64,000 nt of DNA, from positions 28,148,001 to 28,212,000 of the forward strand of contig OZ296651.1 of assembly GCA_965655095.1 (NCBI GenBank), in the 5' to 3' direction. A program made the position numbers and the translations under genes. How positions within the stretch are numbered: position 1 is the first letter of the stretch; each line of letters starts with the position of its first letter. This document shows positions 1,252 to 51,179 of the stretch, piece after piece. Source of the stretch: Haplodiscus bocki. Lineage: Eukaryota. The notes under the pieces were generated by a model. That model searched no databases and was not told where the DNA came from. It saw only the letters and a list, made by a program, of their open reading frames with translations.

Positions 1252-2889
1252 ATGTCTGTTTTCCATGTTGCATTCAACATACACGAAACTTACTTGGACC
1301 CTTTCAAACGTGTCTCGGAAAGTCTTGCTTTACTTGCTCTCAACGGCGATCTTGCTGGAACTGTTTCAATTTGCCCTGAAGATGAAGATATTCAAATACC
1401 ACCCCAAGTCGTCACCCCAAAGAAAGACCCTCAGAAGCGAATGAACAGCAAGGCTAACAATAGTAATGCTAAGGTTTGCTTTCTAATTTTCTACGTATAA
1501 AACGTATAACAAAGAAGGCGAACTTAATCAGACATTAAGTGAAACGATTACGTACCAAATGACATAAGACCACTAAATATATATTGGAAAATAGTCTCAC
1601 AGAACATGAAATCATCAATGACGATTATGAATAATAGGTGCGATTTTGCTAATCACAGCCCCAAAAGAAATTGCAATACTATCAGCATTGAAACCAATAC
1701 TGTCGGCACCGCGACATCGTTCTGACTGCTCGGCGGCCGGCATGGGTGCCCTTACTACGGTCGGAGATATTCACCTGTCGCCATTCGTAACAATTTGTTG
1801 TTGGTAAAAAGATCCGTTGAATATATGATAGGAAAGTTAACGGATAGTACGCATATAAATTGCAGCTAATCAGAACATTTTGTCTGTGCCAGATTTATTT
1901 TTTCATGTGTAGTGAGACTCTTTTTAATTTTATGTTTACTGGCTCATGTCATTTAGGAATTCAGCAGTGAAACTTAATGTCAATTTTTTTCGCAAACGCG
2001 CCGTGATTGACCGATTGAGAGAGGCTGAGCCATAATGAAGCACAGTTCCTATTAAATTTTGTTCGTTTTTGTTTACTCTTGACGTCACTCTTCGCTACTG
2101 GGTTTCAAATACTTGTGCTAATTGATATTCTCATATATCAAATATTCTCGATTTTGTTTATGTAAAATTCCCAGCTTATTTTCCGCTTTTTCAAAATGAT
2201 GACCATTCATCGCGTCGAAAAATTGCAAACTATTCAAAGCGTGGAAAATTTTCAAATTTTAGGAACACTCTGAAATTTTCGACGCTTTGAATATTCGACG
2301 CATTGGGAATTTTCGCAGAATTCGCCCAATTCTTATCTTTTCCACGAATCGGTGTGATAATTTCGCTAGCTCCATTTTTTTCACTACTCTAAATTTTTAG
2401 CGCTTAATGCCACCCAATGACAACCATCTTTTTTTATCCCATCTTTTTTTTATTTTTTTTTTGTTGGCATATATATGACCAAAATTTTGAGGGACTAACC
2501 AATTTGATTTTTTTTCGCTCTGATTTTCATCGTGTTTGAGTATTTTTAACGCCCAAACAATCTTGTTTTTGTTTCAGCGCCCAAAAGTCGCCCCGTCAGT
2601 CGCCAGCTCAAAAGCTCCCTCTGGAACATTTGTTGGCTCAGTGACCCCTAATTTTGGAACCATGCCGGATGGCAGAATAATTTGCCCCGTTTGCACCACG
2701 ATTTTGAAAGACATGCAAACTGCCAAACGTCACTTTGATTCCAGCCACAGTGGAATAGTTTTTGAGTGCGAAATGTGTGGATGTAGACAAAACAGGAAGG
2801 ACAACATGAAAACTCATCTAATGAAAAAGCATCAGTTGTCGGCTGACATTGCTGGCATAGTTGCCGGTCGAAGCCAGAAAAGTGCTTGA
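1252..2889 (+). CDS. C2H2 zinc-finger gene 1 of cluster (two exons 1252-1473 + 2578-2889, ~177 aa)
   Basis: Exon 1 MSVFHVAFNIHETYL...NAK ends at AAG|GTTTGC. Exon 2 follows TTTCAG| in phase 0 (RPKVAP...) and holds CPVC..H..H and CEMC..H..H fingers. The N-terminus aligns with the other five paralogues. Confidence 0.8.
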
Positions 2890-3610
2890 GAATACTCAAC
2901 CATGTAGTCGATCATTTTGAAGTAGATTTTGCTTTAGTATTTTTTCAAAAGTCAATTTTTGATTTTCCATTTTATAATTTTTGCCGTATGTCTGGATTCG
3001 ATGACGAAATTCATTTTGCTTAGCCTCTTTTGAGAAAATAGAAGTCGTTGGCGAGCTGCTTTTTGAAATAAACGCATGACAAGTTCTGTGAATTGTGTCT
3101 ATTTAGTCACCTAAGGGATAAAAGCTACCATTTTGTAAATGTTATCATTATAAATATATTGTGAAAATTTCAATATGTACTGTGAGTGTACTGTACACTA
3201 CGAATGCACAGTAACTTCTGAATGATCCGTGACCGTTGTAAACGAATATTGGTCCTACGGCGGTGGCAGGTCAGTGATGTACATTTAAAAAATCTTTTTA
3301 TTAGTTTGTACATGAATTATTTCATCTATATTCATTTAAATACTTTTGTTTGGCAATATTTCGGATTTTAGGCCTTGAAGTATACCGAATCACTGCCAGA
3401 CACAAATTTTCGATCTGAAAAATCGTTGACATCTTTGAATCAATGTTCTTCAGAAAAAAATGCTTATTTAATGGTTATCTGATCAGATCACCTTTGCAAT
3501 TTTTGGTCATTTTTATGCTTCTGAAAAAAAAATTTGGAAGATTCCTTTAATTTTTTGATTTCCTTTATATTGAAAAAAGCCCTTTAAAAATAAAAGTACA
3601 TCACTGGCAG

Positions 3611-4306
3611 CCCGTGTTGGAAAAACATGGCTACCATGCCATGGTCATACCATGATCATGGCGAAACATGTTTATGATCATGCCATGATGACGGCATGGC
3701 AGCCATATTTTTTGACATGTTTGCAATGATTCATGATATGATTACCATGATTTCTTGAAAATAATAATAATTTTCCCTGTTCAATTAGTTGCTGCCCATA
3801 TACAATTATATGGCAAATTTACTGGTTTCAAAGGATTGTACTCCCCGAAAATATCGATTCAGCAAAGTTAAACGAAGATTACTCCAGCAATACTTTTCTG
3901 TTTTAACTAGACAGTAAGTTCTTATCTAAGAGCAGTTTCAATAGACCACGCATAGTACAGCTTTTTGTTACTTTCAGCTTATTTAGAATTTTAAAGAGAT
4001 CGATTTTGGTAAACGTCTTACGGGTAGTTTCTGATGGCTTCGCTCAACATATTCCGCGTTAAAAAGTAAAGGATTACCAGATGGCTACTAATGAACAAAG
4101 ATGGTTGGATAATTAGCTTCCGGACTACGGTATAATAATGACCATGGTAACCATGGCATGATCATGCTATCTTCCATAACGTTCATACCATGATCATGCT
4201 ATATTACATGATGACCATGCTATGATCTTGGCATGATCATACCATGGCGAGTATGAATCACCATGTCGTAGCATGATTGTCATGTTTAATCATTTGTCAA
4301 CACGGG
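3611..4306. mobile_element. MITE with CCCGTGTTG termini and CATG-rich subterminal repeats
   Basis: CCCGTGTTG at 3611 and CAACACGGG ending at 4306; both ends are dense in ccatg/catgat units; no ORF. Confidence 0.7.
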
Positions 4307-5035
4307 TGGGGAATCAAGTGCGAGGGATAGCATGCGGAACAATTTTAGCAAGCTCACCAATTGTCTCCCCAAAACAGTACCCATTGTACTTGATAAATGC
4401 CAGAAACACACGTGACTTTAGTGACAACCTGCGCGCGTCCCAATTGTGAAAAAGAAGGTGAAACGTTTTGCATATTATACAAGTTTTTATAAATCTCCGT
4501 TCAATTGTATTTTTTTCGTTTCTAGAATTTAATCTCATTTTCTCTGCAGTTATTGTTTACTGTTATAATCATTGAATAAAAGGAGAGTCAATCGACTGGG
4601 CAATTTGGCTGTGGTACGATTCTCGAATTCTCTACAAAGTTTTTGTACCTCCACAAAACATACGGCTGAATGAATGATTGAAATGAGAATGTAAATTATA
4701 TTTGTTGTCCGTAGGAACGTTCAAGTTATTGTTTTTACAGCGCACGTTTGAAAAAGCGGAAACAAAGTGGCATTTTGACCTGTTATTTTCCTATTGTGAA
4801 ATCGTTTCTGAACTCCGATTTCCTTGAAATATTTTACTTTTGAGGTCAGTTTTGAACGCATGAATTGATTTTTCTCTTCTTTGTGAGACCACTTCAGTAA
4901 TAAAAAATTATACAATAGTCTGAAAGTCCAAAAATGGTGATTGATTGGATGTTCCGGTTCTGCCGTTCTGTAAAACTTGAAAGACGATATATGGATACTC
5001 CCGAAAAATGCATAAGTCTCTTCTTACTTTCCGAC

Positions 5036-5644
5036 ATGGAAATGTTTCAACTTGAGCTCAATGTTCTGCCATCCTACTTGGCTGTCAATGACAACCAAAA
5101 GATATTCTTCGACCTTAGCCAAACTTTAACCCCCGAAATGTGTTCCACAGGATTCGTTTCACTCTTCAAATTTCAAGGCACTCCAAACACATGTTTCTCA
5201 AGCGCTTTCAGCTCTTATCCCAAGACTTTGAAACGACCTGCAGACTCTTCGCCTGTTCGGAAACGGCCGGCCAAAAGGATACAAGCAAGCCCATTGACCC
5301 AAGACGTCCCTTGTGAGTCTAGCAGCTTTGTTGACCCTTCAAAGGATGGATCCGTTCCTGGAGTAACATCTGGACTTCAATTACCAAGTCAGAAACTTTC
5401 TGATCTGTTTGGAGAATGCGTGGCCGGAGGGGAGAAGTTCTTAATGTGTCTCAATTGTAGCTATAAATCAAAAGATAGAGGCAACATGACGAGACATGTT
5501 CAAAATCAACACGGAATTGCTCGTTCATATGTCTGTTCAACTTGTGGGAAGTCCTTCAGAGAACGCAACAGGCTCAAAGTTCATTACATCAAAGAGCATA
5601 AACTGGCTGAACCTATTGCGAAAGCAGCAGCCACTATGTCATGA
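5036..5644 (+). CDS. C2H2 zinc-finger gene 2
   Basis: ORF 4934-5644; the Met at 5036 (MEMFQLELNV) aligns with paralogue starts. Fingers CLNC..H..H and CSTC..H..H; C-terminal EPIAKAAA. Confidence 0.85.
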   Translation: MEMFQLELNVLPSYLAVNDNQKIFFDLSQTLTPEMCSTGFVSLFKFQGTPNTCFSSAFSSYPKTLKRPADSSPVRKRPAKRIQASPLTQDVPCESSSFVDPSKDGSVPGVTSGLQLPSQKLSDLFGECVAGGEKFLMCLNCSYKSKDRGNMTRHVQNQHGIARSYVCSTCGKSFRERNRLKVHYIKEHKLAEPIAKAAATMS

Positions 5645-5961
5645 AGTCATGAAAAGTTGTTGACTAGCTCCGAAAAACAAAAGGCCAGATTGGTTCTCTC
5701 ATTTAAGACGAGGCCTTTTAAATTTCCAATGTTTTGAACGATTCTCCGTTTGTACGTTTGTAAATGCAGTAAATGGGCTTAAATTAGTTATAATTAGACC
5801 CTTCAGCTGTCAATTTTTTAACCAATTAACCTGCGAAAACTAACCGGTTAATCGATTAACCGGAACGATCCAGTAAAAGAAAATATTAGTTTTTAGACTA
5901 AATATTCCAATTTCTGGTAATACAGAGATATCGATATCACGATTTGTTCGGATGTGAAAAT

Positions 5962-6660
5962 GAGACGGCCAGCTAGCTCAAGACGGCCAGCTAGCTCAAG
6001 CATATTTTTTACCCGATCGCAATGTCTTATAATCAACTGCAACTTTCAAAAAAAATGGAGGAGAGTGTTTTGAATCTAGTTTTCGAACGTTTTCCACAAA
6101 TATCATTTCCACCATTGCTTTCTGCATTTGTTGGCATTATCAATTTATCGGGGCTCCAAAGAAAACTACAATAAAACGCAAATAAATCTGCAATACGAAG
6201 TCTGCGTGACATTTTTATATTCCGGAAAAGGAAAACTGCACTACTGAACTGAATATTTTCTTTCGAAAAGTTTTTTCGACGGAAATTTGAAAAATCGGCG
6301 GAAAATAATAATTTTCATGAGAGTAAAAAAAACTGCTCAAAATTGAATAATAAATTTAAAAAATTATAGGTAAATGCTACTAGAAGTCAAACCCGTACCA
6401 AGAGCTTCACAACCCTGTTGTCCTATCCACTATGCCAACGGGATTTCTGGTATTTTTCAGATTTTAGCTAAAACATAAAAATATATGGCAAGGCGAAGAT
6501 TCGAACCCGGACCTACTACTTGGGAAATTTTTGTCCTAAACCCACTGTCTCGGTCATTCATAATAACTCATAACTTGGCAAATTACTATGGAAAATAAAG
6601 AAAAATGACCATACTGAGTGAATGATTTTTACGTATTCAAAAATATGTGGCGAAAAAAAA
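5962..6660 (-). mobile_element. Helentron/DINE-1-like non-autonomous repeat with tRNA-like segments
   Basis: AGACGGCCAGCTAGC end (duplicated here) shared with the copies at 30214 and 48531; B-box-like GATTCGAACC near 6498 and a tRNA-like stretch at ~6383-6444 on the minus strand. Confidence 0.5.
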
Positions 6661-7746
6661 AACAAAATAGTTTTTGCAAGGTCCTTAAATGAAGAAATCA
6701 TTTTTGCCGAATATGCAGTTCCAAAACAGTTGATAACGCTTTCGAACTAGCTGAAGCTGCCGCGCAAACCTCGGAAAACAATAAAATAACATTATAGCAG
6801 TAGAATACATGTTTCATTTCATCGGTTACAAGTTTGGTTACCGTTTAAAATCTTTAACCGCTTAACCTTTTAACCGCTAACGGCTCTATTTGTAATCTTC
6901 ATTTCACATAATGATTTGAAGAGATTACCCGGAAAACAGTTTTTTGGTCAGCTGTGATTGAACGCCATAAAATCTTTTTACATGCAAACGAAACTTTTTA
7001 GTCATTGACAAACGAATAAGTGGCACTAGGGGTATCGAACATGTGGATGACAAACGATACCGGTAAAATCGATCAGTATTGAGATTTACAGTGTATCCTG
7101 AAACAGTTGAGAAATGAAAAAATTGCTGTCGCATCCGGAGCTCGGCAGGATTGTCCAAAAGTGATTTGAATTTTAAATAAGAGGCACCGCTGCAATGTGA
7201 TACTTTCCGCCCTTGATGGGGAGAGAAGATGGATGCTGAAATCGAGGACGCTGACAGTCTTCATTTTAGTCTTTTATTTTGATCCTCGGTTATGTTTTTT
7301 TTGTGGGTTCCTCCTAACTACCAATGATTGTACGAAAAGGAGTCGTTATTATTTTCAGCCCATATTTTGATTATATCGAAAGAAAATTATTCATTCAACA
7401 TTCAGGTTTTTTAACACCAAATTTGCCATTTGCACGATAAAGCAAAATGCACGCAAAAATATGTCTCCAATTTCTGCTAAATTTCTGTAGAATACTGCTA
7501 CAGTCGTGGTGTTTCTCGAAAATTAGTTTTTGTCATAATATAGGTGCAAAAAATTGATAAATTTTGCACCTTTTTGAGACACTTTTTAGTTCGATGCGGT
7601 ATTTTAAACTTTCTCCCGTAATTTGGAAGGCGGAAAATGCTGCAGTTAGCTCGGCGTCTTGTTTTATTTCATTTAAATATCATCATCATGTAGACAATGC
7701 CGACTTTGATCTGTGCTCGGCTTGTTTACGCTTTGAATCAATATAT

Positions 7747-9338
7747 TGGCGATTACATGTCATTTCTTTCTATGCCATTTCAAGCGCTGCAATTTTAACC
7801 GTTCACACTTTCAACCGTTCACACTTTCAACCGTTAACTTTTCCAACTGTTCACACTGTCAACCGTTCACACGTTCAGCCGCTTGCCTTTCCGACTGCTT
7901 GCAAATGGAACCGCCGCAAAATCGACCTATTGAAGTAAGTTCAAAGGTATTCAGTTTTTCCAAGACGTTCGAAAACAATTGAAGTAAGTGAGTAAGAAAT
8001 CAATTGAACGCCATCAATCGGAATGTCTTACGTAACTTTCGAAGGTCGAATTGGACAAGCTACCAAATAAACCAAACTTGGAAATGATGTTTCCGAACTT
8101 CACCAGAAAAAAATAGATGAAATTTGTATCTGATGAGGAGAACAAACTTGAAGGAGCTTTAATTTCTTGTCAACGACTTTGAATATTTTTCGAAAGGGTC
8201 AGCCAGTCCGTAGTCCAAATGTACTTACTATCTCACAAGAGGCAGTGCCTCTTGGGTTAATTTGTACAGTCAGCCATGTGAATGTTTTGAGACGCACTCC
8301 GGCTGCAAGGAGCCGTCACAACAAAAAATCAAATATCTCTTCAGTTTAGGTTTTCTTTTTCTGCAAAAACAAAACAGAAGAACTGAATTTCACTCAGGAG
8401 ACAAAAGAAAAGATCAGTGACTACAGCTAATCAAATCAAAAGAAAGAAAACATACAAAAAATGTGTATAAATGTTGTTACCTAAATTTTGCTATTTTTCT
8501 GAGATGCGGCACAGCATTTCCGAGCTCTTAAGTGCTTCCGATATTTTGCATCTGTCTTTTAATTTTTTTGTAACAAGGGCGCTTGGAGCACAATAGTCAG
8601 GTAGTTTCCTGATTATCTTTAAACTTCTGCATTTTTGAATGTTTTTCAAGTTCTGTAAGAGTAACTAAGTTTCGGATACTTCGATGGCAATCGCCACAGT
8701 TGGTGTTGAAAATTGGGCTCTTCTCAAAATTTGGTTCACTTCTTCCGCTCTGCATTCTTTGAAATCGCAGTCGCTATTATGAGCACCTTTTGTTTCGATA
8801 ACAGTTTAGTTTTGAGTTTTGAAGATTGCGGGACATTTTTATTTGTAATATTTTGTGCATTGCCAATGCATACAGTTTTTTTATAGTTGTTTATTTCTGG
8901 TTATAACAGCGGCCGCTGTGCTCCGCTGTTTTTCGGCCTCTTTTTGATTCTATAATTTGAACTTGCGTTTTGGAACGTCTGATAGGTGCTGCTACTGTAA
9001 TACTGAATGGCTTCAGTTTTATTATAAATAATTTCGATTAGGAGTATGTGCAAATTGTGTTAGCTTCCTATTATCGGTGTGTTATTTGCTGTTTCCGGTA
9101 ACTAGGACGCTTTTATAATCAAACCTCAAAGTAAATGTAGCGTTTAAAAAGGAATAATTTTAATTACACTTAGATACTGTAATTAATTGATTACTCGATA
9201 ATTGAGGCGGTTGAAATTGCAAGCGATCGAAATTGCTCGCGGTCGAAATTGCACGCGGTCGAAAAGTCAGCGTTTGAAAGTGTGAACGTTTGAAATTGCA
9301 GCGGTTGAAATGACATAGGACGAAATGTCCTGACGCCA
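7747..9338. mobile_element. ~1.6-kb non-autonomous TIR element, copy A
   Basis: Left end catttc..gccatttcaa(g/c)cgc with ttcaaccg repeats; right end gcggttgaaatgacataggacgaaatgtcctgacgcca; colinear with 23770-25231. Confidence 0.7.
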
Positions 9339-9754
9339 TAATAACATTTTAAGCGCAATAAATAAGCTTAAGCGTCGTGAGCTGAAGCATTATAAAATAA
9401 ACGACCGGCTTTATTGTTTTTCACAAATAATGGTGAAGTCGAAGATGTTGATGCTCTGTTTTTGGCTGGATTCCCAGAGGTCTTTCGAAATGTGACATGG
9501 GACATTCCACATGCTTTCACCAAGTCCTTCGACAGCACCTATGGAGCAGTTGCTTTCTCGGGGTAAAGATGTGAGCAAAAAGCAAAGAAGAGTGTCACAG
9601 TTCGTGAAAATTGATTTTTCATGAAAATTGGTCTTTGATTTTACTGATTCGTCTCTCATTTTCTTTGTCAGCAATAAGCGGAAAAAAGCGCAACTTCTAT
9701 AAGCGAAAGAGGCAATAAATGATGTTTTTGTAAGCCATGAATACAGTGCTTTAG

Positions 9755-10390
9755 ATGGAGTTGTATGACATTCATCTCAATTTTTCTGAAGATTTTCTGA
9801 TCTCTCAGTTCAACGAGTTTGGCTATAGCGCTATGCTGCACATTATCAATCCAATTGGCCTTGAAATTTTTTCTGTGCCGGAAACTGTGGGCTCAATTCT
9901 GATCAATCCTTCTTTTCAAAATGAGCCAATTTTCAAAATCACATCAACGTTTAATGAAGTTACATGTCATGCGAAGAAATCTTCGAACGAGCTGTTACAT
10001 CATACCCAGTCGAGAAGACGAGCCGCGCCTAGCCCTGTAAGTGTTCCAAGCAATCAGAAAAGGTCCTTGTTGAGCACAAAACCCTTTACACCAGCCAGTA
10101 GATATTTGGTTTCTGGAGATAGTCGGTCGGTTTTGGAAGAGATGTTTTCTGAAAGCATTTTTCGGGGCGAAAAGTTGTTCATGTGCATGGTATGCAGCTA
10201 CAAGAGCAAGCAAAAAGGCTCCATGCTGAGACATGTGCAATGTGTTCATTCAGACAACCCGCCTTCGTTTCGATGTACAATGTGTGGCACCTGCTTCAAA
10301 GAACGCGGCAACCTGAAAAGTCACTATAAAGGCAAACACAAAATGGAAGACAGTATCGCAAAAGCCGCCGCCAACTTAGCTACGGGATGA
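9755..10390 (+). CDS. C2H2 zinc-finger gene 3
   Basis: MELYDIHLNFSEDFL start; CMVC..H..H and CTMC..H..H fingers; EDSIAKAAA tail. Confidence 0.88.
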   Translation: MELYDIHLNFSEDFLISQFNEFGYSAMLHIINPIGLEIFSVPETVGSILINPSFQNEPIFKITSTFNEVTCHAKKSSNELLHHTQSRRRAAPSPVSVPSNQKRSLLSTKPFTPASRYLVSGDSRSVLEEMFSESIFRGEKLFMCMVCSYKSKQKGSMLRHVQCVHSDNPPSFRCTMCGTCFKERGNLKSHYKGKHKMEDSIAKAAANLATG

Positions 10391-14795: not shown

Positions 14796-15202
14796 TACTA
14801 GTCCATGTGAGAATATTAGTTTTAAACTGGACTTTTACAAAACTAAAGTAGTAAAATTAATAAATTCTTCCAAGATGGACAAATCATTGCAGAATGATTT
14901 GAGTACAAGCTATTGATTTTTCTGTTCAATTTTCAAATTTATCTGTTGGTTTTTTGTATCGCTTTGATGGGTTCTCTTTTAATCAATTTGGTTTTTTGAA
15001 GACTCGATCGAAAGCTTCATATACATTGGTTTTTCTGAAGCAAATCAATTCGCATTATAAAAGAGTTTTTTTAACTGAGCAGAAACATTTATCGATAATC
15101 TTGAACGACAAATGCTTTGCTGTCAGGTTTCGGTGCGCCAGAGGTGCCTGTTTTTCAAAATATTGCACTTCTACAGTAATTCCAGATTGATGCTTCCGTA
15201 CA

Positions 15203-15907
15203 ATGACTGATTCCAACTCTACAGATTCTTCTCGTGGATTTTTTGAAGTCGATGTTAGCATTTTAGAATGTTTCTTCTACTATTACAACTCCGATATTGG
15301 CAACTCCATGTTTTTTCCCATAACAAGCCCATTCGAAATCGGTTCAGAATCGATATCGGCCTATCCGGAGAAAGTTGGTTTTTTCACTCTAACAAAGTTG
15401 AACTCTGACGACCGATGTTCCACTCCAAACATTTCAGGCCCTAGCCAATCATCTATTGATTCCAAAAAGAGATCTCTCTATGAGGAACGCAGCAGCGATA
15501 CCCTTAAAAGTAAAGATAAGAAGATAAAGGTTTCTGCAAGAAATTCAAGAAATGTTGTTTCTAAGCGGCTTGTTGGTGAGCCTCAGAAAGAATATAATCC
15601 TCCTCAGTTGAATTTCAGTCCTGAGAGGGTCAGAAGTGGTCGCAAACCAAAAGAGACTGTAAAAGAATTGAAAATAGAAGGCAAACAGTATTTCAAATGC
15701 ATGAAGTGTCGTTACAAAGGGAGACGGAAGTCCTGTATATCAAGACACGTGACCTGTAAACATCCTGTTCCCCCACTTTCTTACAAATGCGTGACTTGTT
15801 ACAAGTCTTGCTCTTCCCGTAAAAATCTCATGATGCACTATGTCAATGTACATCATGTGAAAGAGGCTGTTGCTAAAGCCAGTGCTAATTTGGCTAAAAG
15901 TCGATGA
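15203..15907 (+). CDS. C2H2 zinc-finger gene 4
   Basis: FFEVDVSILECFF motif; CMKC..H..H and CVTC..H..H fingers; EAVAKASA tail. Confidence 0.85.
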   Translation: MTDSNSTDSSRGFFEVDVSILECFFYYYNSDIGNSMFFPITSPFEIGSESISAYPEKVGFFTLTKLNSDDRCSTPNISGPSQSSIDSKKRSLYEERSSDTLKSKDKKIKVSARNSRNVVSKRLVGEPQKEYNPPQLNFSPERVRSGRKPKETVKELKIEGKQYFKCMKCRYKGRRKSCISRHVTCKHPVPPLSYKCVTCYKSCSSRKNLMMHYVNVHHVKEAVAKASANLAKSR

Positions 15908-17999
15908 AGGAACTCTTTGAACAGATAAAAAAATTGAATATCAAGAAACCATTTGCAAAGCAAGCAGATTCAATTACGAAGATATTAGAGCCTTTAGCTT
16001 ATTATCATAGCTTACGGTTGCTTGAATTGTTTCAAGGAAGATATAAAGCCTTTATATAATCTTTAAAGGTGTAGTTTTGTTTTCAACTCACGGGTTCTTG
16101 TATGTTTTCTGCAAAAATGAGTTTAAAGAATTACCGTAATCAGCTTTTTGCAGAGAATGTGCCGTCGCATCACTCATTTTTTTGTGCACCCTCGTTCAGA
16201 TTTTTTGGGCTTTTTAATGATGGTACGTTTATGTACAAGATACTGTTTCTACATATTCTGACTGAAAGGAAGAATGAATATTGGAAACCATCTTGGGGGT
16301 AGTGTTATCCTGTCTGAAACTTCCATTTTTTTACGTCATCAGAGAGTATAGTTATTTAGTGTAAACGGACAAAAACGGGCTCTTTTTGGTGAGTACTTGC
16401 TAATTTCCGTGTTGTTTGCTGTGAAAACTTTTAAACACTGGGCAGCAAAATGGCGTACCTGAAAAACATGAATAAGATCATTTTTTTATTGATACTGTGT
16501 GGCAAGTACTTGCTCACATTCGCCTTTTTATCTGTGCAAATTTCTTAAACATTGATCGGCAAAATGGCATAATCTGAAAAGACGCGAATGACACCAACTT
16601 ATTGGGTATGAGAACTTGTGAGAGTTATTTGTCTTTTTCGGACAAACTCTTGATTGACAGCTCGTGTAGTATTTCTAAAAGTCAAGTCACTGTGTTGCGG
16701 CGTTCCGCTTTTGAAGGTCACTTCAATCGGTTTTGCATTACTGTTAAAAGAACAAGTCTAGAAGTTTATTTTCTTCCCCCGACCGTGGTGTGCATTAATA
16801 CAATCGAAAAGTTTCGAGGAAATATATGATATCGGACAGTTTTTTTTCAGAATCGGAGCGAGCAAATCGAGTGAAAGCCTCTGTTATTACGTTTTCACGT
16901 TTTTTTTTCTGTCAATTTGCGAGTTTTCGCAGGCAGCGCGACAATTTTCGACTTTCAATCCCAACAGCGTAAGCAACGTGTTTCAAACCGTACAAAATAT
17001 CGTTTTTGCTCATTTTCAACTTTCGCCATATTCGCTAGTCCAAAAACCCAAAATCGCTAGAACTGCTGATTACGGCCGAGTTTTCGTTTTTGTCCCTAGA
17101 AAAGCAACGTTTCAGGGCGGAATTAGACTAATTTGATACCAACCGATACGTTTTTTTTTCGGGAAAATCTGATTTTTGTTTTTTCTTGATTTTAGTACAC
17201 GCAAATGGTGAATTTCTGCTATTTTTCCGGACTATTCATTTCTTTGCTTTGTGGACCATCTTTTTGACTAATCATTCATGATAAATCAATGGGAAAAGTT
17301 GTATTTTCCATTTTTTCATTTTTTTGAAACTACAATCAAATAAAGGGTTTTTAGAGTTTCAAGGCCAGCCTAAAATAACTAACCTCGTGAATTTTGCAGA
17401 ATTTCCGCTTTTTAGTTTGAGTAGCAACTTTCTACCCTCTAGCTTCAACTATTGCGATACTGCAGGAAAAAATAAACCGAGTACAGCGCAGTTTGTGAGA
17501 ATTGTTCTGTTTATAATCTTCTTCGGTGTTTTAAATAGCGTTTTTGATGCGTGAAGCCAGCGAAACATAGCTAATTTTGCAATTTTCCCGGAAATTTTCA
17601 AATACTGCCGGCGTTGTCATTTTTAGATACTAGGGCAAACTGATATGGTTCACGGGAGAAAGCAACTTTACTACAGCGGATAATGTTTTTTTTTTCAAAT
17701 TTTTATGTTTTACAGTGGTATAAGTTAAACTAGAAAACGCTGCTATTTGGACCTTTGAGAAATTTTTGCTCTTTTGCCTTCTGAATATGTTTTTTTGTTA
17801 CAAAGCCCATGAAAACTCTTACGAAGCGACACGGTTAGCGAATTCCCACAAAAAATTGAACAACAACAGTTTTTGCTAGAAAAATGTCATTTTCGTTGTT
17901 TAACAGTTGGTGAAATTAGCAATTTTTGCACTATTTCCAAAACTTTGTATTTGCCTTTCAAATAACTTTTATGGGTATGCCTCCAGCTGTAATAAGTTT

Positions 18000-20900
18000 A
18001 GAGAATATACCCGAAGTTTTTTAGTTTCGTCTAGATTGGTGCTTTGAAGTCAGCCAGAAATCAGTGATTTTTTAATGAATTTTTTGGTTTTTGGCCCCCG
18101 AAATCAACTTTTTAGCTTTGACTGCATCAAGTGCGAGAAAAATACATGGGCTATGGCTGAGAACGGGTTCTTCAAGTTTCATTCTTGACAATGAATTTAC
18201 TTTGTTTGATAGGTAGTCCTCGTCCCAACTGGTGTGCCTATTGCCTATATTTTTTCTTCCTAACACCACAATCCACAGTTTAGGAAACTTTTTTCTCGTT
18301 TTCAACCAAGGTTTCTTGAAAGCTAAGAATATCTAGAAGCGTTTCAGTGGATCCTTATTTCGCGTTTGGTTTTTTGTTCAGCTATGATTGCCGGAAAATA
18401 CCAAAAAAGCGCCTAAAAGGTTGATTTTGATCCTATTTAACGATGAGTTTTTCTAAACTCCCCACACAATTGCTTTCCTTTCAAGCATAATCGAAAGCCT
18501 AATGTTTTTGGATTCACTTAACTGGAGCACATTTCCTAATTTTTGTTATTTTTTTCGAAATGACGGTCCTAACATTGCAATAAATGAATGTGATAATTTT
18601 TAGAAATGTTTTTTTTTCTCTACCAGTTCATTTTTGCTGGCCTCGGGTTTAGTCGGAAGTGTTGTTACTTTTACATTGTTATGATATTTGGTTGAACTAC
18701 TTAGAATTGATGGATCGACTACTGTTAAAGAGACATGTTGTCGATTTTAATCATATTTCGTTGTGGCTTTTCTTTAACTGTTACTTCAGTTTCTTACATC
18801 CAGGGCTCAATCGAAAACCTTTTATGTTTAGGTTAATTTAATTGTTGCTGAGGGTCAATTCACTTCTTCTTTCGACCGGTATTGTTCGTCGAAAATGGGT
18901 TCGTAGGTTCGAAAAGTTTTTGTTTCGATTGTTCAACGAAGTCAAACATTGGTTAAATGTTTTTAGCAAGCTGTCAATTGGGTGGTGGAGAGCTCCTGTG
19001 CTCTTTTTCTGAAAATTCGGAACTTTCAGCCCTTGTCCTACTCTGAACGCGCTCTTTCGCTCTACTGAAAATCAGAAAAATCGGTTCATTTTTTGTCCGG
19101 AAGCATAAACTTCGATGAAAACTTCAGAATTGATTTTTTCAGGTGACTATTTAATAAGCTTCTTCCAAAATTTCTGCGGTAGTTTTTAATCACTTTGCAA
19201 AGGATAGCTTAGATTGCAAAGTGCTTATTTGGTACTCATTTGAATTATAGTAAGGCCTAAAATCCGAAATTTCGAACTTTTTCAAATCTGAACAGAAACT
19301 TCGGAACGAAAATGAAATTTTCGAGTCAGAAGTAACTAAAAAATTCAACGGATATTTCATACTTTCTCTTCCTGTCGTAATTTAAGACGACAGGAAGGTC
19401 GTCAATCCAGTGTCTAGAAATTTCGTTCTCATGTTTGCCAGAGAAAGATTTTTTTTCAAAAGTATCTGTCGGTCACTGTCATTGTCCTCATTGCCTGCCT
19501 CAATGACTTGATGGTCAATTACAATAAGTCAGTCAGTAACGTTCGATGACTACAAAAACTTGGGTTCGATCTCCGCTAGGACCAGATTTCTTGAAACGAA
19601 TTTCGCCTTTTTGTCAACTTTGCAAAAAAATTAGTTTGGAAAAACCAAGTATTTTCTCTTTCGAGTTTTTTCATTACAAGCAAGTTCCAAATCTGTAGAC
19701 TTTGGAAGCTAGGCATTGTATTGACTCTAGTGTAAACAACCCAAAAACTTCTCGTCCAGCTGAATTTTTATACTTCTATCATTTGGTATATGTTTACAGT
19801 TGTAACAAATCAGAAATTTATTCGAAAAAAAAATTAAATATTAAATTTCGAAACAACTAACAACTGTAAGTAAACTAGTCTCCTCCGGGTCTCAGAATAA
19901 CCAGAATATCTCGGCCCGAACCTTTCTCTATAAAATCTTCTCAGTCCAAATATGCCGAAGAAGTAATTGTTTTTGTCGTATATTTGACAAAAAATTATAG
20001 CTTCTGTTTGTTTGGTTTTTTTTTGTGCAAAAATTTCTCAAACTTCAAAAGTATGTGCGTTATTGCATAGGCTCACATGACTTTTAAGAAATCAAAGTTT
20101 TCCGGGTAGCCCAGTTTTTTTTGTTCCAAGTATGATAGAAAGGCTGTCATGTTCCGAATTAGTATTGATTTCTCTCGTTCGAACTCCTTCTCCTGCATAG
20201 CCACCAGCTGTACTTCTGTCATAATGTAAGTCGTTAGTTTTCAAATTGAAGAAGGGTTTTTCAACGCGTTAAGTTTGGATTTTTTTGATCGGAGTCCAGA
20301 TAGGCCGAAAGTGCCGTTGTTTATGACTAATCTCTATTCTCACACAAATCCCCAAAACTACTAGCTTGATTTCTTCCTGCGATGACTCGATTTACAGTTC
20401 TTCACACACTGAAGTGCACTCAACACAGAAATGCCTGCTTCGATTATTGCACTAGAATTCTGATAGGCCGAACAAGGCGAAGATTGCCATTAGTTTTGAC
20501 TTTTCTCAATTCTCGAACTCAAAGTTCTCTGAAACTACTGGCTTGATGTCCCCAGTCAGTGTCTTAGTTGAGAGTTTTTGGTTTCTAAAAGGGCATTTAG
20601 CGCTTAACTCTCAGATTTTGTTGATGGCATCCGAATTGTCAGAAACCAAATATGTGAAAAAATTTCATCAGTATCTACTTTTCAAGACCTTCGAACATAC
20701 TTTCCTCCGAAACTACCGACTGGAATTCTTTCTTCAGGGCATCAGCGAGGAGTTTTCCTTTCGCAGGAAAGCACTCAACTCGAAAATGTCCTTCCAATAG
20801 AATCCTGATATGCCGGAAAAGCGAATAGTTCGCCATCAGCTTTGTTTTTTCTGATTTTTTTGATGGATGATTTTATGGAAGTCTTCGAAGTGCAACCAGT

Positions 20901-21050
20901 TTCGATATTTCCTCGATACTTCATCAATTTTGAAATATCATTTCATGGAACGCGGGCCTGCACTTCACCTAAGTTTTCGAAATAGATAGAGAAGACGGAT
21001 GTTGACGAAGTAAAAAAAATGGTTCCCTTCCGAAATGTTTTGCGCCGGTT
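18000..21050 (-). pseudogene. Decayed Pao/BEL LTR retrotransposon pol (RNaseH/integrase) relic
   Basis: Minus-strand echoes in Pao order: 'KFLDTGL' (F.xTG.D), 'SLNNR' (LNxRP), 'SWDEDYL' (W..EYL). Confidence 0.4.
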
Positions 21051-21436
21051 TTTCGATGGCAGAGTTGTAAAAATTTAGCTGTTTTGGCTGTTTTAACTCT
21101 ATTTAACCATTTTCAATGTACTATACATTTACAGGTAGGCCTTCAATATCCCGTCTTGTTATATGTCCAATCAGCTACAGCTAAAAATTTTTCGATCTAA
21201 AAAGTAGTTGACACCGCCATTAAAACTATTTTCGAAAATCCTAATGAAAGTTGCTCGTATTATGGTGATCTGTTCTGGTCAAGTTTGCAAGTTTTGGTGA
21301 CTTTTTTGCTTCAGGAAAAAATGAGAATTTCAAGGATTCCGTTAAATTTTTTGAATTCTTTTGAATCGGAGAAAGGCCTTTAAATAAAACGCTCATCACT
21401 GAGTAGCTTGAATATTTTTTCCGTGAACTATTTGCC

Positions 21437-22778
21437 GGTGTCAGGACATTTCACCCCGCAGACATTTCACCCCGCAGACATTTCACCCCAGGACATTCCA
21501 CCCCACAGACAGTTGCAGCCCAAAATACCCGAATCCAACATAGGCAAGCCCAAAATACCTAAAGTCCCAAAGTACCTAAGCTAAAATTACCCAAAGTGCA
21601 AAATATCCAATATACCCAAAAGCAACGTACCCAATATTTGAACAGCCATACCAATTAAATAATTGAAAGCGCTTTAACATTAACTTTTCCCAAAAACTTG
21701 AATGTTGCATAGTAACTAAATTGATATTGCAATTATGATGTTAATTGTTATTTCTCTTACAATAAAATTCTATCCACCATTATAAATTCACTGAACAAAA
21801 TTAGTACCACATCTAGTATCTACTTTGCAAAAATTCACTATTTTGGACTTTAAAGTTTTTGAAAACCCGAAATTATACCTAAAATTTATGACAAAAACGA
21901 AAAAATCAGATATATGTAAAAAGCAGATGAAGTCTGTTGCAAAGAAATGCGGGCGTTACATTTCTGTCTCACAGTGCGGGAAATTTTGTGGGTTGCCCTT
22001 TACTGTTCTCAAAAAATTGCTGAAATTAATTTTTGTCTTTATAATGGGCAAAGTTTGAAAATTTGGGGTGGCCACTTACAAAAAATGACTCTAATGAAAA
22101 TTAATAATTGCAAAGTCTCAAAAACTACACTTCCAGAAAATTATTTTGTGTGTTTAGACGGAATTTTGGAAATGCAAGTTTCCGTTTATTTTTTCAAGCA
22201 AAAACTGATTTCGAATTTTTCCAAAAATGTTTTTCTGTTCAAGGTTATTTTCTGTAGATATTTTGACGTGTGGTATTTTAATCTGACACCAATATTTTTG
22301 AAACATCATTTAACTTCTAGCGTTAAGACGCTGTTAATTATTTACTTAGTATAGTTTTTTCAATCTTGGTATTTTGGGACTTTAGGTATTTTGGGCTTGG
22401 GTAATTTGGGACGTATGGAATTTTGGGCTTCGGTAGTTTGTTCTGCCACCCCCAGGGACATTTCACCCCGAATTGAAAAGTAGTTTTGATTACCGCTGAT
22501 ATTAATATGCATGGTGAACAAATAGATAAGATTATTAGTATAATAAAAACACGAGGTGTTAATAACAATAATTCTATGCGAAGGCCCTAAAATAAGGTTT
22601 TAATAGAAACAATCTCTTGCTAATTCGTCAAATTGAGTAGTAAATGTAAGGTGCAGTAGAAAGCAAAAAGAAAATAGTTCTCTAATTATACTTCCAAATT
22701 AACATTATCAGATGCTTTCAAAAATGAGGAGAAAATGTCCGTCGGGTGAACGAACTGTCTTGGGGTGAAAGGTCCTGA
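21437..22778. mobile_element. TIR element with GACATTTCACCCC repeats, containing a nested inverted-repeat element (~21510-22448)
   Basis: TCAGGACATTTCACCCC at left and GGGGTGAAAGGTCCTGA at right. Internal cccaaaatacc / ggtattttggg inverted arrays interrupt the left repeat run, which resumes at 22449. Confidence 0.7.
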
Positions 22779-22823
22779 AATTTTATTTCCCATGTTAATG
22801 GTTATAAATTCAGGTCAGTTCAC

Positions 22824-23426
22824 ATGGAATTCTTTGACGTAACAATAATGTTATCTGAGAACTTTCTTGGAAAAGTCAACTGCTGGAAACCAACTCATTT
22901 CCCTCTCAAAAATCACAGCTGGACTTCTATTGGATCAGGTGAAGAGGTCGGCTCCATGATGTTGAAATCATCGACTGAGTCCCACCCATTGCATTTGGAC
23001 TTGCCGATAATTCCCCCCTCAAAAAGGTCCAGTAATTTTTCTTTTGATCCCATTGAGCATAAGAAAAAACGAGCTTCATCAAACCGGCCGAATCTTCATA
23101 ATCTTACACCTGTTTCAAGACCGGGGAATTCATTTTCTGGTACTGCGAAACCTAGCCTGGATACTTCGGACATGTTTGCAGAATGTATCCTCGCTGGTGA
23201 AAAAATTTTCGTGTGTGGTGTTTGCAATTATAAGACTAAAATCAGACCGAACATGCGGAAGCATGTGGAGTGCATGCATTCAGATAACCCGCCATGTTTT
23301 CGATGCTCGACATGTGGAAGTTCTTTCAAAGAAAAAAGTAAACTGAAAGGTCATTATATGAAGACACATAATTTGGAAGAACCCGTAGCGAAAGCTGCTG
23401 CAGCAATAGCCGTGAGCAATAGATGA
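22824..23426 (+). CDS. C2H2 zinc-finger gene 5
   Basis: MEFFDVTIMLSENFL start; CGVC and CSTC fingers; EPVAKAAA tail. Confidence 0.88.
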   Translation: MEFFDVTIMLSENFLGKVNCWKPTHFPLKNHSWTSIGSGEEVGSMMLKSSTESHPLHLDLPIIPPSKRSSNFSFDPIEHKKKRASSNRPNLHNLTPVSRPGNSFSGTAKPSLDTSDMFAECILAGEKIFVCGVCNYKTKIRPNMRKHVECMHSDNPPCFRCSTCGSSFKEKSKLKGHYMKTHNLEEPVAKAAAAIAVSNR

Positions 23427-23769
23427 TTTTGGAAACTTCATTTGATGAATTAATTTTTGCTAGTTTTTATTCATTGGCCTGTTATGTTAATTTTGCTCAT
23501 GTGCAATTGAAACTTGATGCAATAAGGTCCCCTTGGTATGGCATAACCATAAAAATGAATTATCCAACTTTTACTTACAGCAGCTGAATTCCTCTCAATG
23601 TGAAGTAGACAATATGGATCGCTTGTTGAGGTGACTTATGCCGAGGTTGAATTGTAACTGATTTTAGTATTTTGTTAGATAACGACTTTCAGGGACCATT
23701 AAATTTAATTTAGTCTGCTCATGAATAAACGTTTTCCTGATAAAAATTGTTATAGGTACTTATCATTTT

Positions 23770-25231
23770 TCGTTACATGTCATTTCGTCATACGCCATTT
23801 CAACCGCTGCAATTTTAACCGTTCACACTGCTTGGCTTTTCGACCGCTTGCAAATTCAACCGCCGCAAATTCGACCTATTTTTTTAAGTTCAAGGTTATT
23901 CAATTTTTCAAGATGTTCGAAAACAAATTGGAAAAAGTACCAAATGTACCAAACTTTGAAACGATGTTTCCGAAATTCACCCGAAAATTAAATGAATTTT
24001 GCATCTCAATAGGACAATAAACTTGAAGGGAATTTGATTTTTTTGTCACCGGCTTTGAACGTTTTTCTGAAGGGTTAGCCAGCCCGTAGTCCAATTGTAC
24101 TTCCGATCTCGGGGAGCAGTGTCTCTTGGATCGAACTGTACAACCAGCCATGTTATTGTTCTGAGACGCACTCCGGGAGGCTGCAAGGAATTATCAGGAC
24201 AAAAAATCAAATATCCCTTCACTTTAAAATTTGTGTTTCTGCAAAAAAACTGAATTTTATTCACAAAAAAGAATTACAGCAAAATAAAGGAAACGAAACA
24301 TACCAAAAATAAACCGACCGATAAACAATTTTTGCCTGAATCTTGCTATTGCTATAAAATATGGCACTGCATTTCCGAACTCTGAAGTGCTTCGGATTTT
24401 TTGCATCTGTTTTAATTTTTTCGCAACGGTGGCGCTTGGAGCACAATGAACCAAGTTCCGTCCAAAAACAATGTTTTTTTTTCAAGTTCCGTAAAAGCAA
24501 CCAAATATGCGGTGTGGAACCACTTCAAAACACCCGCATTCCGTAATGCCAGCCTTCTACGCTATTGGGCATTGCAAACTGAAATGCATATTCATCGGAA
24601 GTTTCGGACATTTCATTGGCAATCGCCACAGTTGGTGTTGAATATTGGTCTCTTCTTTTATTTTGATTGACTACTCTCGCTCGACATTTGCTGGGGTCGC
24701 ATTTGCAATTATGGTTACCTTTTCTTTCGGTGACAGTTTCCTTTTCAGTTTGCTAGATTGCGGGACATTTTAGCTTGTAATGTTTTGTGCAACGCCAATG
24801 GATACAGTTTATACTTGTTTGTTTCTGTTTATATGAGTGGCCGTCGTGCTCTGCTATTTTTCTGCCTCTGTTTGATTCTGTACTTTGAGCTTGCATTTTG
24901 GAACGTCTGATATGTGCTGCTACTGTAATACTGAATAGCTTCAGTTTCTATACACAATTTTGATTAGAGTGTGTGCGAATTGTGTTACCTTCATATTATA
25001 GGTGTGTTAATTGCTGTTTCCGGTAACTACGACGGTTTTATTATGAAACTTTGTTTTAATTATTACATTTTAGAGGGATTGGTTTTAATAACTTTTAGTT
25101 ACTGTAACTAATTGATTCCTCGATAATTGAAGCGGTCAAATTTGCGGCCGTTGAATATGCAAGCGATTGAAATATGACGCGGTCGAAAAGGCAAGCGGTT
25201 GAAATGCTATAGGAAGAAATCTCCTGATATC
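23770..25231. mobile_element. ~1.5-kb non-autonomous TIR element, copy B (same family as 7747-9338)
   Basis: Colinear high similarity, e.g. ggcaatcgccacagttggtgttgaa and tgctgctactgtaatactgaat occur in both copies. Confidence 0.75.
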
Positions 25232-25321
25232 ATCATTCTTCGCCTCCATTTTTATAATGGAAAGGAATATTATTCAATGGTTCGTTTCGTTTTTCTTTGT
25301 TTTTCAGACAAGTTTTCCAAT

Positions 25322-25380
25322 TGAGAATCTGTTCACTTCTAATGAGAATTTGTTCACTTCTAATGAGAATTTGTTCACTC
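25322..25380. repeat. 21-bp tandem repeat x~3 (TGAGAATTTGTTCACTTCTAA)
   Basis: Read directly from the sequence. Confidence 0.85.
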
Positions 25381-26107
25381 CTTGTTGCGATATTGAATAA
25401 TACTTCATTTTACCAGCGTCATGTTAATTTCCGCGTAATATTTCCAACATTTCTTATTTGGAAGGAACTTCATTCGTTCATAATTCAGGTTTTTTCTCAC
25501 ATCAGATTTCCCAATTGCACGAGGAATTTAAAGTGCACACAAAAAGTTTTTATGTCACCATTTTTTTCCAAATTTCGCATGGAATGCATCTAGCGTAGTG
25601 GTTTTTCTCAAAAATAGTTTTTGTTGCGAAAATTTATGTTTTTTTTTTTGCGAAAGAGATTTAAAAAAAACGATTTTCGATGCAATTTGGCACATTTTTG
25701 GACACTTTTTAGTTCGAATTACGGCATTTTAATGTTTCTTCCGTAATGTGGAAGACGGAAAGTATCCTGGAGTTAACCGGGCGTCTTGTTCAATTTTCAA
25801 ACAATGACGGAATCAAATCCTAAAAGTGACGTTAAAATTCCGCTGTTTGAAAATGAACTTGAAGTTAAGCAACCTGTTGTAGAAAGTGACAATTGAAAGC
25901 GGTTTCTGAGCAAACAAGGTAACAGCTTTTCACAGTGAACGTTGGCAGATTTACAGATTTCGTAATAATGGTTGCAAAATTCTCTTTGGGTCGGGCTGAG
26001 CCCGAAAAAAATAGCGACTGTGTTGCAAAGTCGACTAGTTGGGCTAAATTTTTCCTGTGAAATGAACTATTTGTCTTTCTTCCTGTCAAGTCTTCAGAAC
26101 AGTGTGT

Positions 26108-26710
26108 ATGGACTTTTGTGACGTAACAATCAACTTGACTGAGTTTTTTTTGCGAAGTGTGTTCTACTTGAAAGACATGTATTTCCCTCTAAAAATCGAC
26201 AATTGGACCTCTGATTATCGCAGCTTCTCCGAACAAGTGGGTACCGTGGTGATAAAATCGTCTGTCGACTACCCAACCCAGTTCACTTTTCCCAAAAGTG
26301 CTCCATCAAAGAGGACACATAGCGCCACCCATCCATCGATTGAACCAAAAAGGGGCCGAATTTCATCCAATCGGGTAGTTCCTCATAATCCTGTAACTGC
26401 TGCAAGACCTGGGAGTTCATCTGGTATTAAGAAACCTATCCTAGATGTTTCCGACATGTTTGCAGAATGTATCCTCGCTGGTGAGAAGGTTTTTGTGTGT
26501 GGGGTTTGTAACTATAAAAGTAACGTCAAGCATAACATGCGGAAGCATGTGGAGTGCATGCATTCAGATAACCCGCCATGTTTTCGATGCTCGACATGTG
26601 GAACTTCTTTCAGGGAAAAAAATAAACTGAAAGGTCATTATATGAAGACGCATAATTTGGAAGAACCCGTAGCGAAAGCAGCTGCAGCAATGGCCGTGAG
26701 CAATAGATGA
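26108..26710 (+). CDS. C2H2 zinc-finger gene 6 (closest paralogue of gene 5)
   Basis: ATG at 26108 (MDFCDVTINLTEFFL); 3' half nearly identical to gene 5. Confidence 0.88.
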   Translation: MDFCDVTINLTEFFLRSVFYLKDMYFPLKIDNWTSDYRSFSEQVGTVVIKSSVDYPTQFTFPKSAPSKRTHSATHPSIEPKRGRISSNRVVPHNPVTAARPGSSSGIKKPILDVSDMFAECILAGEKVFVCGVCNYKSNVKHNMRKHVECMHSDNPPCFRCSTCGTSFREKNKLKGHYMKTHNLEEPVAKAAAAMAVSNR

Positions 26711-49440: not shown

Positions 49441-49448
49441 ATAATATA

Positions 49449-50745: not shown

Positions 50746-50753
50746 TTTATCAT

Positions 50754-51137: not shown

Positions 51138-51179
51138 TTATATAGTAAAAACTATTATTATATACTAGGAAGCATAAGT

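What the first reader, a model, noticed from the sequence alone, without database searches (positions are those of the whole stretch)
1252..26710. Six-gene zinc-finger cluster with an apparently unnamed N-terminal domain
Seen: all six co-oriented proteins begin M-x-[VMLF]-[FY]-x-[VIL]-x-[FLIV]-x-[ILFV]-x-E-x-[FY]-L (MSVFHVAFNIHETYL, MEMFQLELNVLPSYL, MELYDIHLNFSEDFL, FFEVDVSILECFF, MEFFDVTIMLSENFL, MDFCDVTINLTEFFL). A second strand follows (AGTVSI, TGFVSL, VGSILI, VGFFTL, VGSMML, VGTVVI), then a basic S/P-rich linker, two C2H2 fingers and a conserved terminal helix (H-x-L-x-E-x-[VI]-AKAAA). I do not recognise the N-terminal module as KRAB, SCAN, ZAD or BTB. Inference: a lineage-specific effector/dimerisation domain paired with variable fingers, analogous to KRAB- or ZAD-ZNF expansions and possibly targeting the transposons among which it sits.
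Basis: partly seen in the sequence, partly recalled or inferred. Interest (0 to 1): 0.75.

Follow-up and report, generated by a model that had tools for sequence, protein, structure and literature searches.

The report
Acoel two-finger gene family, new head
The six genes are real members of a family of about 100 or more small two-zinc-finger proteins, so far seen only in acoel worms, that share a short N-terminal module matching no known domain. It is a new example of a lineage-specific zinc-finger expansion, but expression, partners and targets are untested.

Summary
The window holds six co-oriented genes of about 180-235 aa, five intronless and one with an intron in the linker. Each has four parts:
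- an acidic N-terminal module of about 50 aa;
- a basic S/P/K-rich linker;
- two C2H2 fingers preceded by an extra beta-hairpin;
- a conserved Ala-rich C-terminal helix.

The same genome, an acoel worm of 1.5 Gb, gives at least 98 matches in about ten tandem co-oriented arrays. Relatives appear only on a few other contigs that look like acoel DNA.

The N-terminal module matches nothing in Pfam, PDB sequences or three structure libraries. Its hydrophobic pattern and one glycine are invariant, and profile-profile comparison links the distant arrays (E 6e-7).

The finger pair is most like Tramtrack and Kaiso. The N-terminal module and the linker diverge fastest.

A lola-like model of alternative exons is rejected. 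No BTB exon lies near any array, the start Met is invariant, and the acceptor sites about 10 nt upstream fall in mixed phases. Those acceptors fit the spliced-leader trans-splicing known in acoels.

Expression, oligomerisation, DNA binding and any link to transposons are untested. The scan had not noted this family before.

The parts
1252..1473 (+). Gene 1, exon 1: N-terminal module plus the start of the linker (74 codons). The donor GT is at 1474.
   Evidence: hhalign to family profile positions 3-71, E 3e-5.
2578..2889 (+). Gene 1, exon 2 (after acceptor AG at 2576-2577): rest of the linker, two C2H2 fingers and a diverged tail. It is the most divergent member in the window.
   Evidence: hhalign to family profile positions 129-198, probability 97.5%, E 7.5e-12.
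5036..5644 (+). Gene 2, a single ORF of 202 aa counted from the conserved Met. The ORF is open from 4934.
9755..10390 (+). Gene 3, a single ORF of 211 aa. An acceptor-like CTTTAG directly abuts the ATG (9749-9754).
15203..15907 (+). Gene 4, a single ORF of 234 aa, with 12 extra residues before strand 1. An acceptor-like TTCCAG lies at 15180-15185.
22824..23426 (+). Gene 5, a single ORF of 200 aa. This is the protein that was modelled. N-terminal module is 22824-22979; hairpin, fingers and tail are about 23163-23423.
26108..26710 (+). Gene 6, a single ORF of 200 aa from the conserved Met, 63% identical to gene 5. An acceptor-like TCTTCAG lies at 26091-26097, 10 nt before the ATG.
23075..23458 (+). 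The 3' half of gene 5, and the only stretch with DNA-level similarity (84.6%) to gene 6 (26362-26738). The mosaic suggests gene conversion of the finger half.
   Evidence: dS is 0.29 in the fingers against 1.4 in the N-terminal module.
23670..25800 (.). Interspersed high-copy repeats between genes 5 and 6. They are related to 7371-9327, between genes 2 and 3.
   Evidence: Contig word depths of 10^3-10^4 against about 40 in unique parts. Self-blastn at 70-80% identity.

Best explanation
These are six independent protein-coding genes of a large family that has so far been seen only in acoel-like sequence. The family grew by tandem duplication into co-oriented arrays.

Each gene encodes a nuclear factor of about 200 aa with four parts:
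1. An acidic N-terminal module of about 50 aa with an amphipathic strand, a short helix and one or two further strands. It resembles no known domain.
2. A basic disordered linker with a K-R motif that looks like a nuclear localisation signal.
3. A two-finger C2H2 unit of the Tramtrack/Kaiso type, in which an extra beta-hairpin packs on finger 1.
4. A conserved Ala-rich helix at the C-terminus.

Most likely mechanism (inferred): the finger pair reads a short DNA site. Part of that site would be shared across the family, because finger 1 keeps Asn at +3 and Arg/Lys at +6. The rest would vary with the variable positions. The N-terminal module would supply self-association or partner binding. This would give the avidity and partner specificity that two fingers alone lack, as BTB does for Tramtrack and ZAD does for insect ZNFs.

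Translation starts at the conserved Met. The mRNA 5' end is probably made by splicing at an acceptor about 10 nt upstream. In an acoel this most likely means spliced-leader trans-splicing.

Shown: the genes, the family, its arrays, purifying selection, and the absence of any known domain match.

Inferred: nuclear localisation, DNA binding, oligomerisation and trans-splicing.
For: - Family and arrays: at least 98 matches in the genome, nearly all open frames of 180-240 aa, in co-oriented clusters on C1, C3, C4, C5, C6 and C9. Similar arrays occur on other contigs.
- Constraint: dN/dS is 0.08-0.19 in the fingers and 0.18-0.53 over whole genes. Most frames are intact.
- N-terminal module: the pattern is conserved. 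AF2 pLDDT is about 80-87. Nothing matches in Pfam, PDB sequences, the PDB-wide structure search, Foldseek or the Atlas. It is found only in proteins of about 200 aa with this architecture.
- Fingers: invariant C-x2-C-x12-H-x4-H twice. pLDDT is above 90, with a hairpin at residues 118-131. The best structural matches are Tramtrack 2drp (Z 6.8, 64 of 65 residues) and Kaiso (Z 6.0-6.5). The closest PDB sequences are CTCF fingers.
- Start and splicing: Met is invariant in 34/34. TT[CT]AG lies within 45 nt upstream in 25/34 against 15% for background ATGs (p 5e-14). Its distances fall in all three phases, and in 5 cases an in-frame stop lies between it and the ATG.
- Acoel spliced-leader trans-splicing is published: 30% of genes in Symsagittifera roscoffensis (PMC9911081).
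Against: - There is no RNA evidence. No RNA run holds the region, and no transcript contig carries these proteins.
- Poly(A) signals are not enriched downstream: 12 of 31 genes have one within 500 nt, where I estimate about 63% by chance from base composition (the estimate was not computed by a tool).
- The two AF2 runs disagree on which strands of the N-terminal module pair, so its fold is not settled. A module of about 50 aa may not fold alone.
- Against the most distant arrays the N-terminal similarity is not significant sequence by sequence (strict profile). It is significant only profile to profile.
- The Pfam C2H2 scores fall just below the curated cut-off (24.1-24.6 against 25.2).
- Nothing shows DNA binding or self-association.
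Confidence: 0.6

Rival explanations
1. The ORFs are alternative 3' exons of one long lola-, fruitless- or mod(mdg4)-like gene, each spliced to shared upstream exons that encode a BTB domain.
For: The units are co-oriented tandem two-finger units with an acceptor site just upstream of each. The nearest ESM Atlas clusters include arthropod 'fruitless' finger fragments. The finger pair is Tramtrack-like.
Against: - None of the 64 BTB matches in the genome lies near any array.
- The first residue is Met in 34/34.
- The distances from acceptor to ATG fall in all three phases, and 5 contain in-frame stops. In several genes a stop lies 1-4 codons before the ATG.
Confidence: 0.04
2. The N-terminal module is not an oligomerisation or effector domain. 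It could be an acidic-hydrophobic activation motif, a degron, or an intramolecular lid that masks the basic finger region until a signal releases it.
For: The module is acidic (median pI 4.4, net charge -3), while the linker and fingers are strongly basic (pI 10.1 and 9.2). It is short. AF2 gives two different strand pairings. The low pTM of the full model (0.36) shows no fixed inter-domain packing.
Against: Strictly alternating hydrophobic positions and an invariant Gly across about 30 very divergent paralogues point to a defined beta structure, not a loose acidic motif. pLDDT is above 80 in both models.
Confidence: 0.25
3. The fingers bind RNA or protein rather than DNA. The family would then not be transcription factors.
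For: The inter-finger linker is one residue longer than the canonical one and is not TGEKP-like (the comparison with the canonical linker is my own knowledge). Two fingers alone bind DNA weakly (my own knowledge). Some structural rows are RNA-linked proteins (Serrate/ARS2, Z 5.1-5.8).
Against: The best structural and sequence matches are DNA-bound finger pairs: Tramtrack, Kaiso, CTCF, ZBTB10. Base-contact positions carry typical DNA-reading residues (Asn +3 and Arg/Lys +6 in finger 1). The flanks are basic.
Confidence: 0.1
4. The ORFs belong to a mobile element or virus, or are decaying, unexpressed copies.
For: They sit among repeats, and a Polinton lies 23 kb downstream. No RNA evidence was found.
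Against: - Arrays are co-oriented, and DNA similarity is confined to the coding sequence, with no shared flanks or terminal repeats.
- Paralogues are only 25-60% identical yet keep intact frames of about 200 aa.
- dN/dS is well below 1.
- The family is conserved on contigs from other samples, with dS saturated.
Confidence: 0.03

Closest known systems
TTK-type BTB-zinc-finger proteins (Tramtrack; also vertebrate Kaiso/ZBTB33)
   Same: The layout is an N-terminal protein-interaction module, a long linker and a C-terminal pair of C2H2 fingers. Finger 1 carries an extra N-terminal beta element. These are the best structural matches: 2drp Z 6.8, Kaiso Z 6.0-6.5.
   Different: The N-terminal module is about 50 aa and is not BTB. 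Kaiso has a third finger. The genes are small and mostly intronless, and they sit in arrays of paralogues. No BTB exon lies nearby.
ZAD-C2H2 family of insects
   Same: This is a lineage-specific tandem expansion of about 100 genes. Each gene has a small N-terminal module that, in ZAD, homodimerises with paralogue-level specificity (PMC7913770, listed).
   Different: ZAD binds zinc through four Cys (own knowledge). This module has no conserved Cys. ZAD proteins carry longer finger arrays (own knowledge). Here there are exactly two fingers.
KRAB-ZNF (tetrapods) and FiNZ-ZNF (cyprinid fish)
   Same: These are clade-restricted ZNF families defined by a short N-terminal sequence, held in large tandem clusters among repeats. 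FiNZ, like this module, matches no known domain (PMC10547256).
   Different: KRAB and FiNZ sit on a separate exon ahead of long, fast-evolving finger arrays and act on transposons. Here there are two strongly conserved fingers in a single exon, and the N-terminal part diverges fastest. The FiNZ survey kept only proteins with five or more fingers, so it would have missed a family like this.
CTCF fingers 7-8 (closest PDB sequences)
   Same: Both have the C-x2-C-x-aromatic first-finger pattern, H-x4-H spacing and an 8-residue non-TGEKP linker.
   Different: The similarity is generic, at finger level only (about 20-25 bits per pair). There is no other shared architecture.

Membership tests
C2H2 zinc finger (PF00096 and clan) | Two Cys and two His with C-x2-C-x12-H-x3-5-H spacing and a beta-beta-alpha fold | tested here: met
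   All eight ligands are invariant in 31/31 members. AF2 pLDDT is above 90 with a beta-beta-alpha fold. Pfam scores are 24.1-24.6 bits against a cut-off of 25.2, so slightly below it. PDB finger pairs match at E down to 5e-15.
KRAB-ZNF | KRAB domain (PF01352) N-terminal to the fingers | tested here: not met
   No Pfam hit on any N-terminal module at E up to 10.
KRAB-ZNF | Long array of tandem fingers with TGEKP-type linkers and hypervariable contact residues | tested here: not met
   There are exactly two fingers with an 8-residue non-TGEKP linker. The finger region is the most conserved part.
ZAD-ZNF | ZAD (PF07776): about 75 aa with four conserved zinc-binding Cys | tested here: not met
   No Pfam hit. 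There is no conserved Cys column in 34 N-terminal modules.
BTB-ZF / lola-like alternative exons | BTB domain (PF00651) in the protein or encoded upstream of the finger exons | tested here: not met
   No BTB hit in the proteins. None of the 64 genomic BTB matches lies near any array.
BTB-ZF / lola-like alternative exons | Finger exons joined in one reading phase to shared coding exons | tested here: not met
   Met is invariant. Acceptor-to-ATG distances fall in all three phases, and five contain in-frame stops. No cDNA was available for a direct test.
SCAN-ZNF | SCAN domain (PF02023), helical | tested here: not met
   No Pfam hit. The predicted module is mostly beta.
FiNZ-ZNF | 28-aa Glu-rich FiNZ sequence on its own exon, five or more fingers, cyprinid fish only (PMC10547256) | not tested
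   No FiNZ sequence was on hand for comparison. The architecture (one exon, two fingers) and the host clade differ.
Spliced-leader trans-spliced genes of acoels | Acceptor site shortly upstream of the start codon | tested here: met
   TT[CT]AG lies within 45 nt upstream in 25/34 against 15% background, p 5e-14, mostly 0-11 nt away. The unrelated Amt gene in the window has one 14 nt upstream.
Spliced-leader trans-spliced genes of acoels | Leader sequence present on the mature mRNA | not testable with these tools
   No RNA run holds the region. The runs that were laid look like DNA contigs.

The most novel reading that the evidence does not exclude
The N-terminal module is a new self-recognising oligomerisation fold. 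Its fast divergence, next to conserved and partly gene-converted fingers, would keep 100 or more paralogous two-finger factors from cross-pairing. Acoels would then have built, independently of BTB and ZAD, their own large set of dimeric architectural or repressor proteins, possibly expressed from trans-spliced polycistronic arrays.
Probability: 0.25. Interest if true: 0.65.

Novelty: new variant of a known kind. Interest (0 to 1): 0.5.

Why it matters
Clade-specific zinc-finger families with their own N-terminal module (KRAB, SCAN, ZAD, FiNZ) are major drivers of regulatory change. No such family has turned up for Xenacoelomorpha in the papers I could search.

This family inverts the usual pattern. 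The fingers are conserved and there are only two of them, while the N-terminal module diversifies. The family therefore offers a test of whether partner specificity, rather than DNA specificity, can drive such an expansion.

It would also be missed by standard surveys. Its Pfam finger scores fall just below the cut-off, and surveys that filter on five or more fingers exclude it. Acoel transcription-factor counts such as the 73 C2H2 genes reported for Praesagittifera (PMC6451197) may therefore be too low.

Tried and rejected
- Lola-like alternative exons were rejected.
- A transposon or virus origin was rejected, because arrays are co-oriented and flanks are not shared.
The family set is therefore 31 full-length members from 30 loci, the window and two foreign contigs.
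- The RNA test failed. No RNA run was found, and the four runs laid have even unique-sequence depth across intergenic DNA, so they are DNA. The eight differences between individuals inside genes 5 and 6 are too few to use.
- A single-sequence test of the window N-termini against a profile of only the distant arrays was not significant. The profile-profile test was.
- The word-index protein searches found only acoel-like contigs and no named protein.
- The ESM Atlas gave only generic arthropod finger fragments for the whole protein and nothing for the N-terminus.
- The search for related loci would not take the 31-row alignment. With the 10-row alignment it found two further clear environmental relatives and two weak finger-only matches.
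- One profile hit, P0014 (633 aa), has three internally repeated stretches and lacks the family architecture. I took it as spurious.
- A dimer model could not be run with the tools on hand.
- The published leader sequence was not searched for in the genome.
Full report
**What is there.** The region holds six + strand genes. Five are single ORFs: 5036-5644, 9755-10390, 15203-15907, 22824-23426 and 26108-26710. The sixth is split by a GT..AG phase-0 intron: exon 1 is 1252-1473 and exon 2 is 2578-2889. I searched its exons separately and did not build the joined protein. Both exons match the family profile collinearly (E 3e-5 and 7.5e-12).

- a Met followed at once by an amphipathic strand;
- a short helix;
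- a further strand that begins after an invariant Gly;
- a basic linker;
- two C2H2 fingers;
- an Ala-rich tail.

**It is a large family.** A profile of ten members finds at least 98 matches in the 1.5-Gb genome. Nearly all are open frames of 180-240 aa without stops. They lie in co-oriented tandem arrays on six chromosome-scale pieces, and the window array extends about 100 kb further upstream. This is a lower bound, because only 150 of 598 candidates were scored.

Outside this genome, relatives turn up only on a handful of contigs: three ENA assemblies or metagenomes and one JGI-listed metagenome. One of these contigs carries seven units, with gaps of only about 300-390 nt between some of them. 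No named protein from NCBI or UniRef appeared.

Earlier notes of this scan identify the genome as an acoel worm with spliced-leader trans-splicing. The G+C content of about 37% agrees with the published acoel genome (PMC9911081).

**The N-terminal module.** Pfam gives nothing for any of 34 modules, even at E 10. A profile finds no PDB sequence. In 1.84 billion proteins the profile finds only family members of about 200 aa, plus one repetitive protein that I take as spurious.

AlphaFold2 models the module with pLDDT of about 80-87. The two runs differ, however. In the full-length run strand 4-10 pairs with 43-49. In the isolated run the strands are 24-30 and 40-47. Neither model matches any solved or predicted fold:
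- the PDB-wide structure search gives no Z of 2 or more;
- Foldseek gives no E below 5;
- the Atlas gives TM of 0.5 or less, and only to fragments of larger beta proteins.

Pairwise identity is low (17%), but the pattern is strict. Four alternating positions are hydrophobic in 31/31 members, two later positions in 94-100%, and one Gly is invariant. Profile-profile comparison links the window subfamily to the distant arrays (probability 92%, E 6e-7). A sequence-to-profile test against only the distant arrays was not significant. The module is acidic (pI 4.4), while the linker (pI 10.1) and the fingers (pI 9.2) are basic.

**The fingers.** All eight zinc ligands are invariant, and both fingers have H-x4-H spacing. 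The model places a confident hairpin (residues 118-131) before finger 1 and a helix (186-195) after finger 2. The best structural matches are the Tramtrack two-finger peptide (Z 6.8, rmsd 3.0, 64 of 65 residues) and Kaiso (Z 6.0-6.5). From my own knowledge, Tramtrack finger 1 also carries an extra N-terminal strand. The closest PDB sequences are CTCF fingers.

In finger 1, position +3 is mostly Asn and +6 is always Arg or Lys. Position -1 of finger 1 and positions +2, +3 and +6 of finger 2 vary. By the usual recognition rules (my own knowledge) this predicts a shared core with variable flanks.

**Selection.** Between close paralogues, dN/dS is 0.08-0.19 for the finger region, about 0.26-0.5 for the N-terminal module and 0.26-0.7 for the linker. 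Some of the more diverged pairs give values near 1 or are saturated. The fingers are therefore the conserved part, which is the opposite of the KRAB-ZNF pattern.

dS is mosaic. Genes 5 and 6 have dS 0.29 in the fingers but 1.4 in the module. Their only DNA-level similarity (84.6%) covers the 3' half. This points to gene conversion of the finger half.

**Gene structure.** The start Met is invariant in 34/34. A TT[CT]AG acceptor lies within 45 nt upstream in 25/34 genes, against 15% of background ATGs (p 5e-14), usually 0-11 nt away. The distances fall in all three phases, and in five genes a stop lies between the acceptor and the ATG. No BTB exon lies near any array. These results reject a lola-like gene with shared coding exons.

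The acceptors fit spliced-leader trans-splicing, which is reported for 30% of genes in an acoel (PMC9911081). A 5'-UTR intron is the alternative. The unrelated Amt gene in the window has the same feature. Poly(A) signals are not enriched downstream. Together with the tight spacing on the foreign contig, this leaves polycistronic transcription open.

**What could not be shown.** No RNA run holds the region. The four runs that were laid behave as DNA. No transcript contig carries these proteins. Expression, oligomerisation, DNA binding and any link to the repeats between the genes are therefore inferences or remain open.

**Comparison and verdict.** In layout the proteins work most like Tramtrack-type BTB-ZF factors. 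In genomic behaviour they resemble the ZAD, KRAB and FiNZ expansions. They fail the defining domain test for each of these families. I rate it a new variant of a known kind, of moderate interest.

Noticed in passing
window 49441-64000: An AT-rich stretch (23-29% G+C against about 37% for the rest of the window). Its ORFs look like a Polinton/Maverick: an integrase-like ORF at 61452-62306, a P-loop ATPase-like ORF at 52907-53584, and a possible cysteine protease at 57341-57682. Earlier notes of the scan cover it.
   Followed up: no
window 46870-48354 (- strand): An uninterrupted ORF of about 480 aa that reads as an Amt-type ammonium transporter (by eye only, not searched). An acceptor-like site lies 14 nt before its likely ATG. 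This fits trans-splicing being common in this genome.
   Followed up: partly
L002 1356-10618: On a contig from another sample, seven family units lie head to tail. The gaps are only about 300-390 nt between some units (1982 to 2339, 2944 to 3242, 9614 to 10001), which is operon-like spacing. Two of the units have an intron after finger 1 or before the fingers.
   Followed up: partly
window 23075-23458 and 26362-26738: Neighbouring paralogues share a recently homogenised 3' half but have old 5' halves. A similar mosaic, with a young linker and an old N-terminus, is seen in the L031/L032 pair.
   Followed up: partly
window 7371-9327 and 23773-25796: Two copies of a repeat of about 2 kb (70-80% identical) lie between family genes. 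Parts of it reach contig word depths of 10^3-10^4, so it is a high-copy interspersed element of unknown type.
   Followed up: no
L001 1-5879: Next to the orthologue on a foreign contig lies a Ty3/gypsy-like polyprotein gene, followed by an ORF with a Monjiviricetes-type fusion glycoprotein domain. It may be an env-bearing retroelement.
   Followed up: no
G000:C12:53673000-53702000: The BTB search shows about 20 tandem BTB matches at a spacing of about 1.4 kb, most with one TGA inside. This is a separate tandem array, with an intron, recoding or decay in each unit.
   Followed up: no
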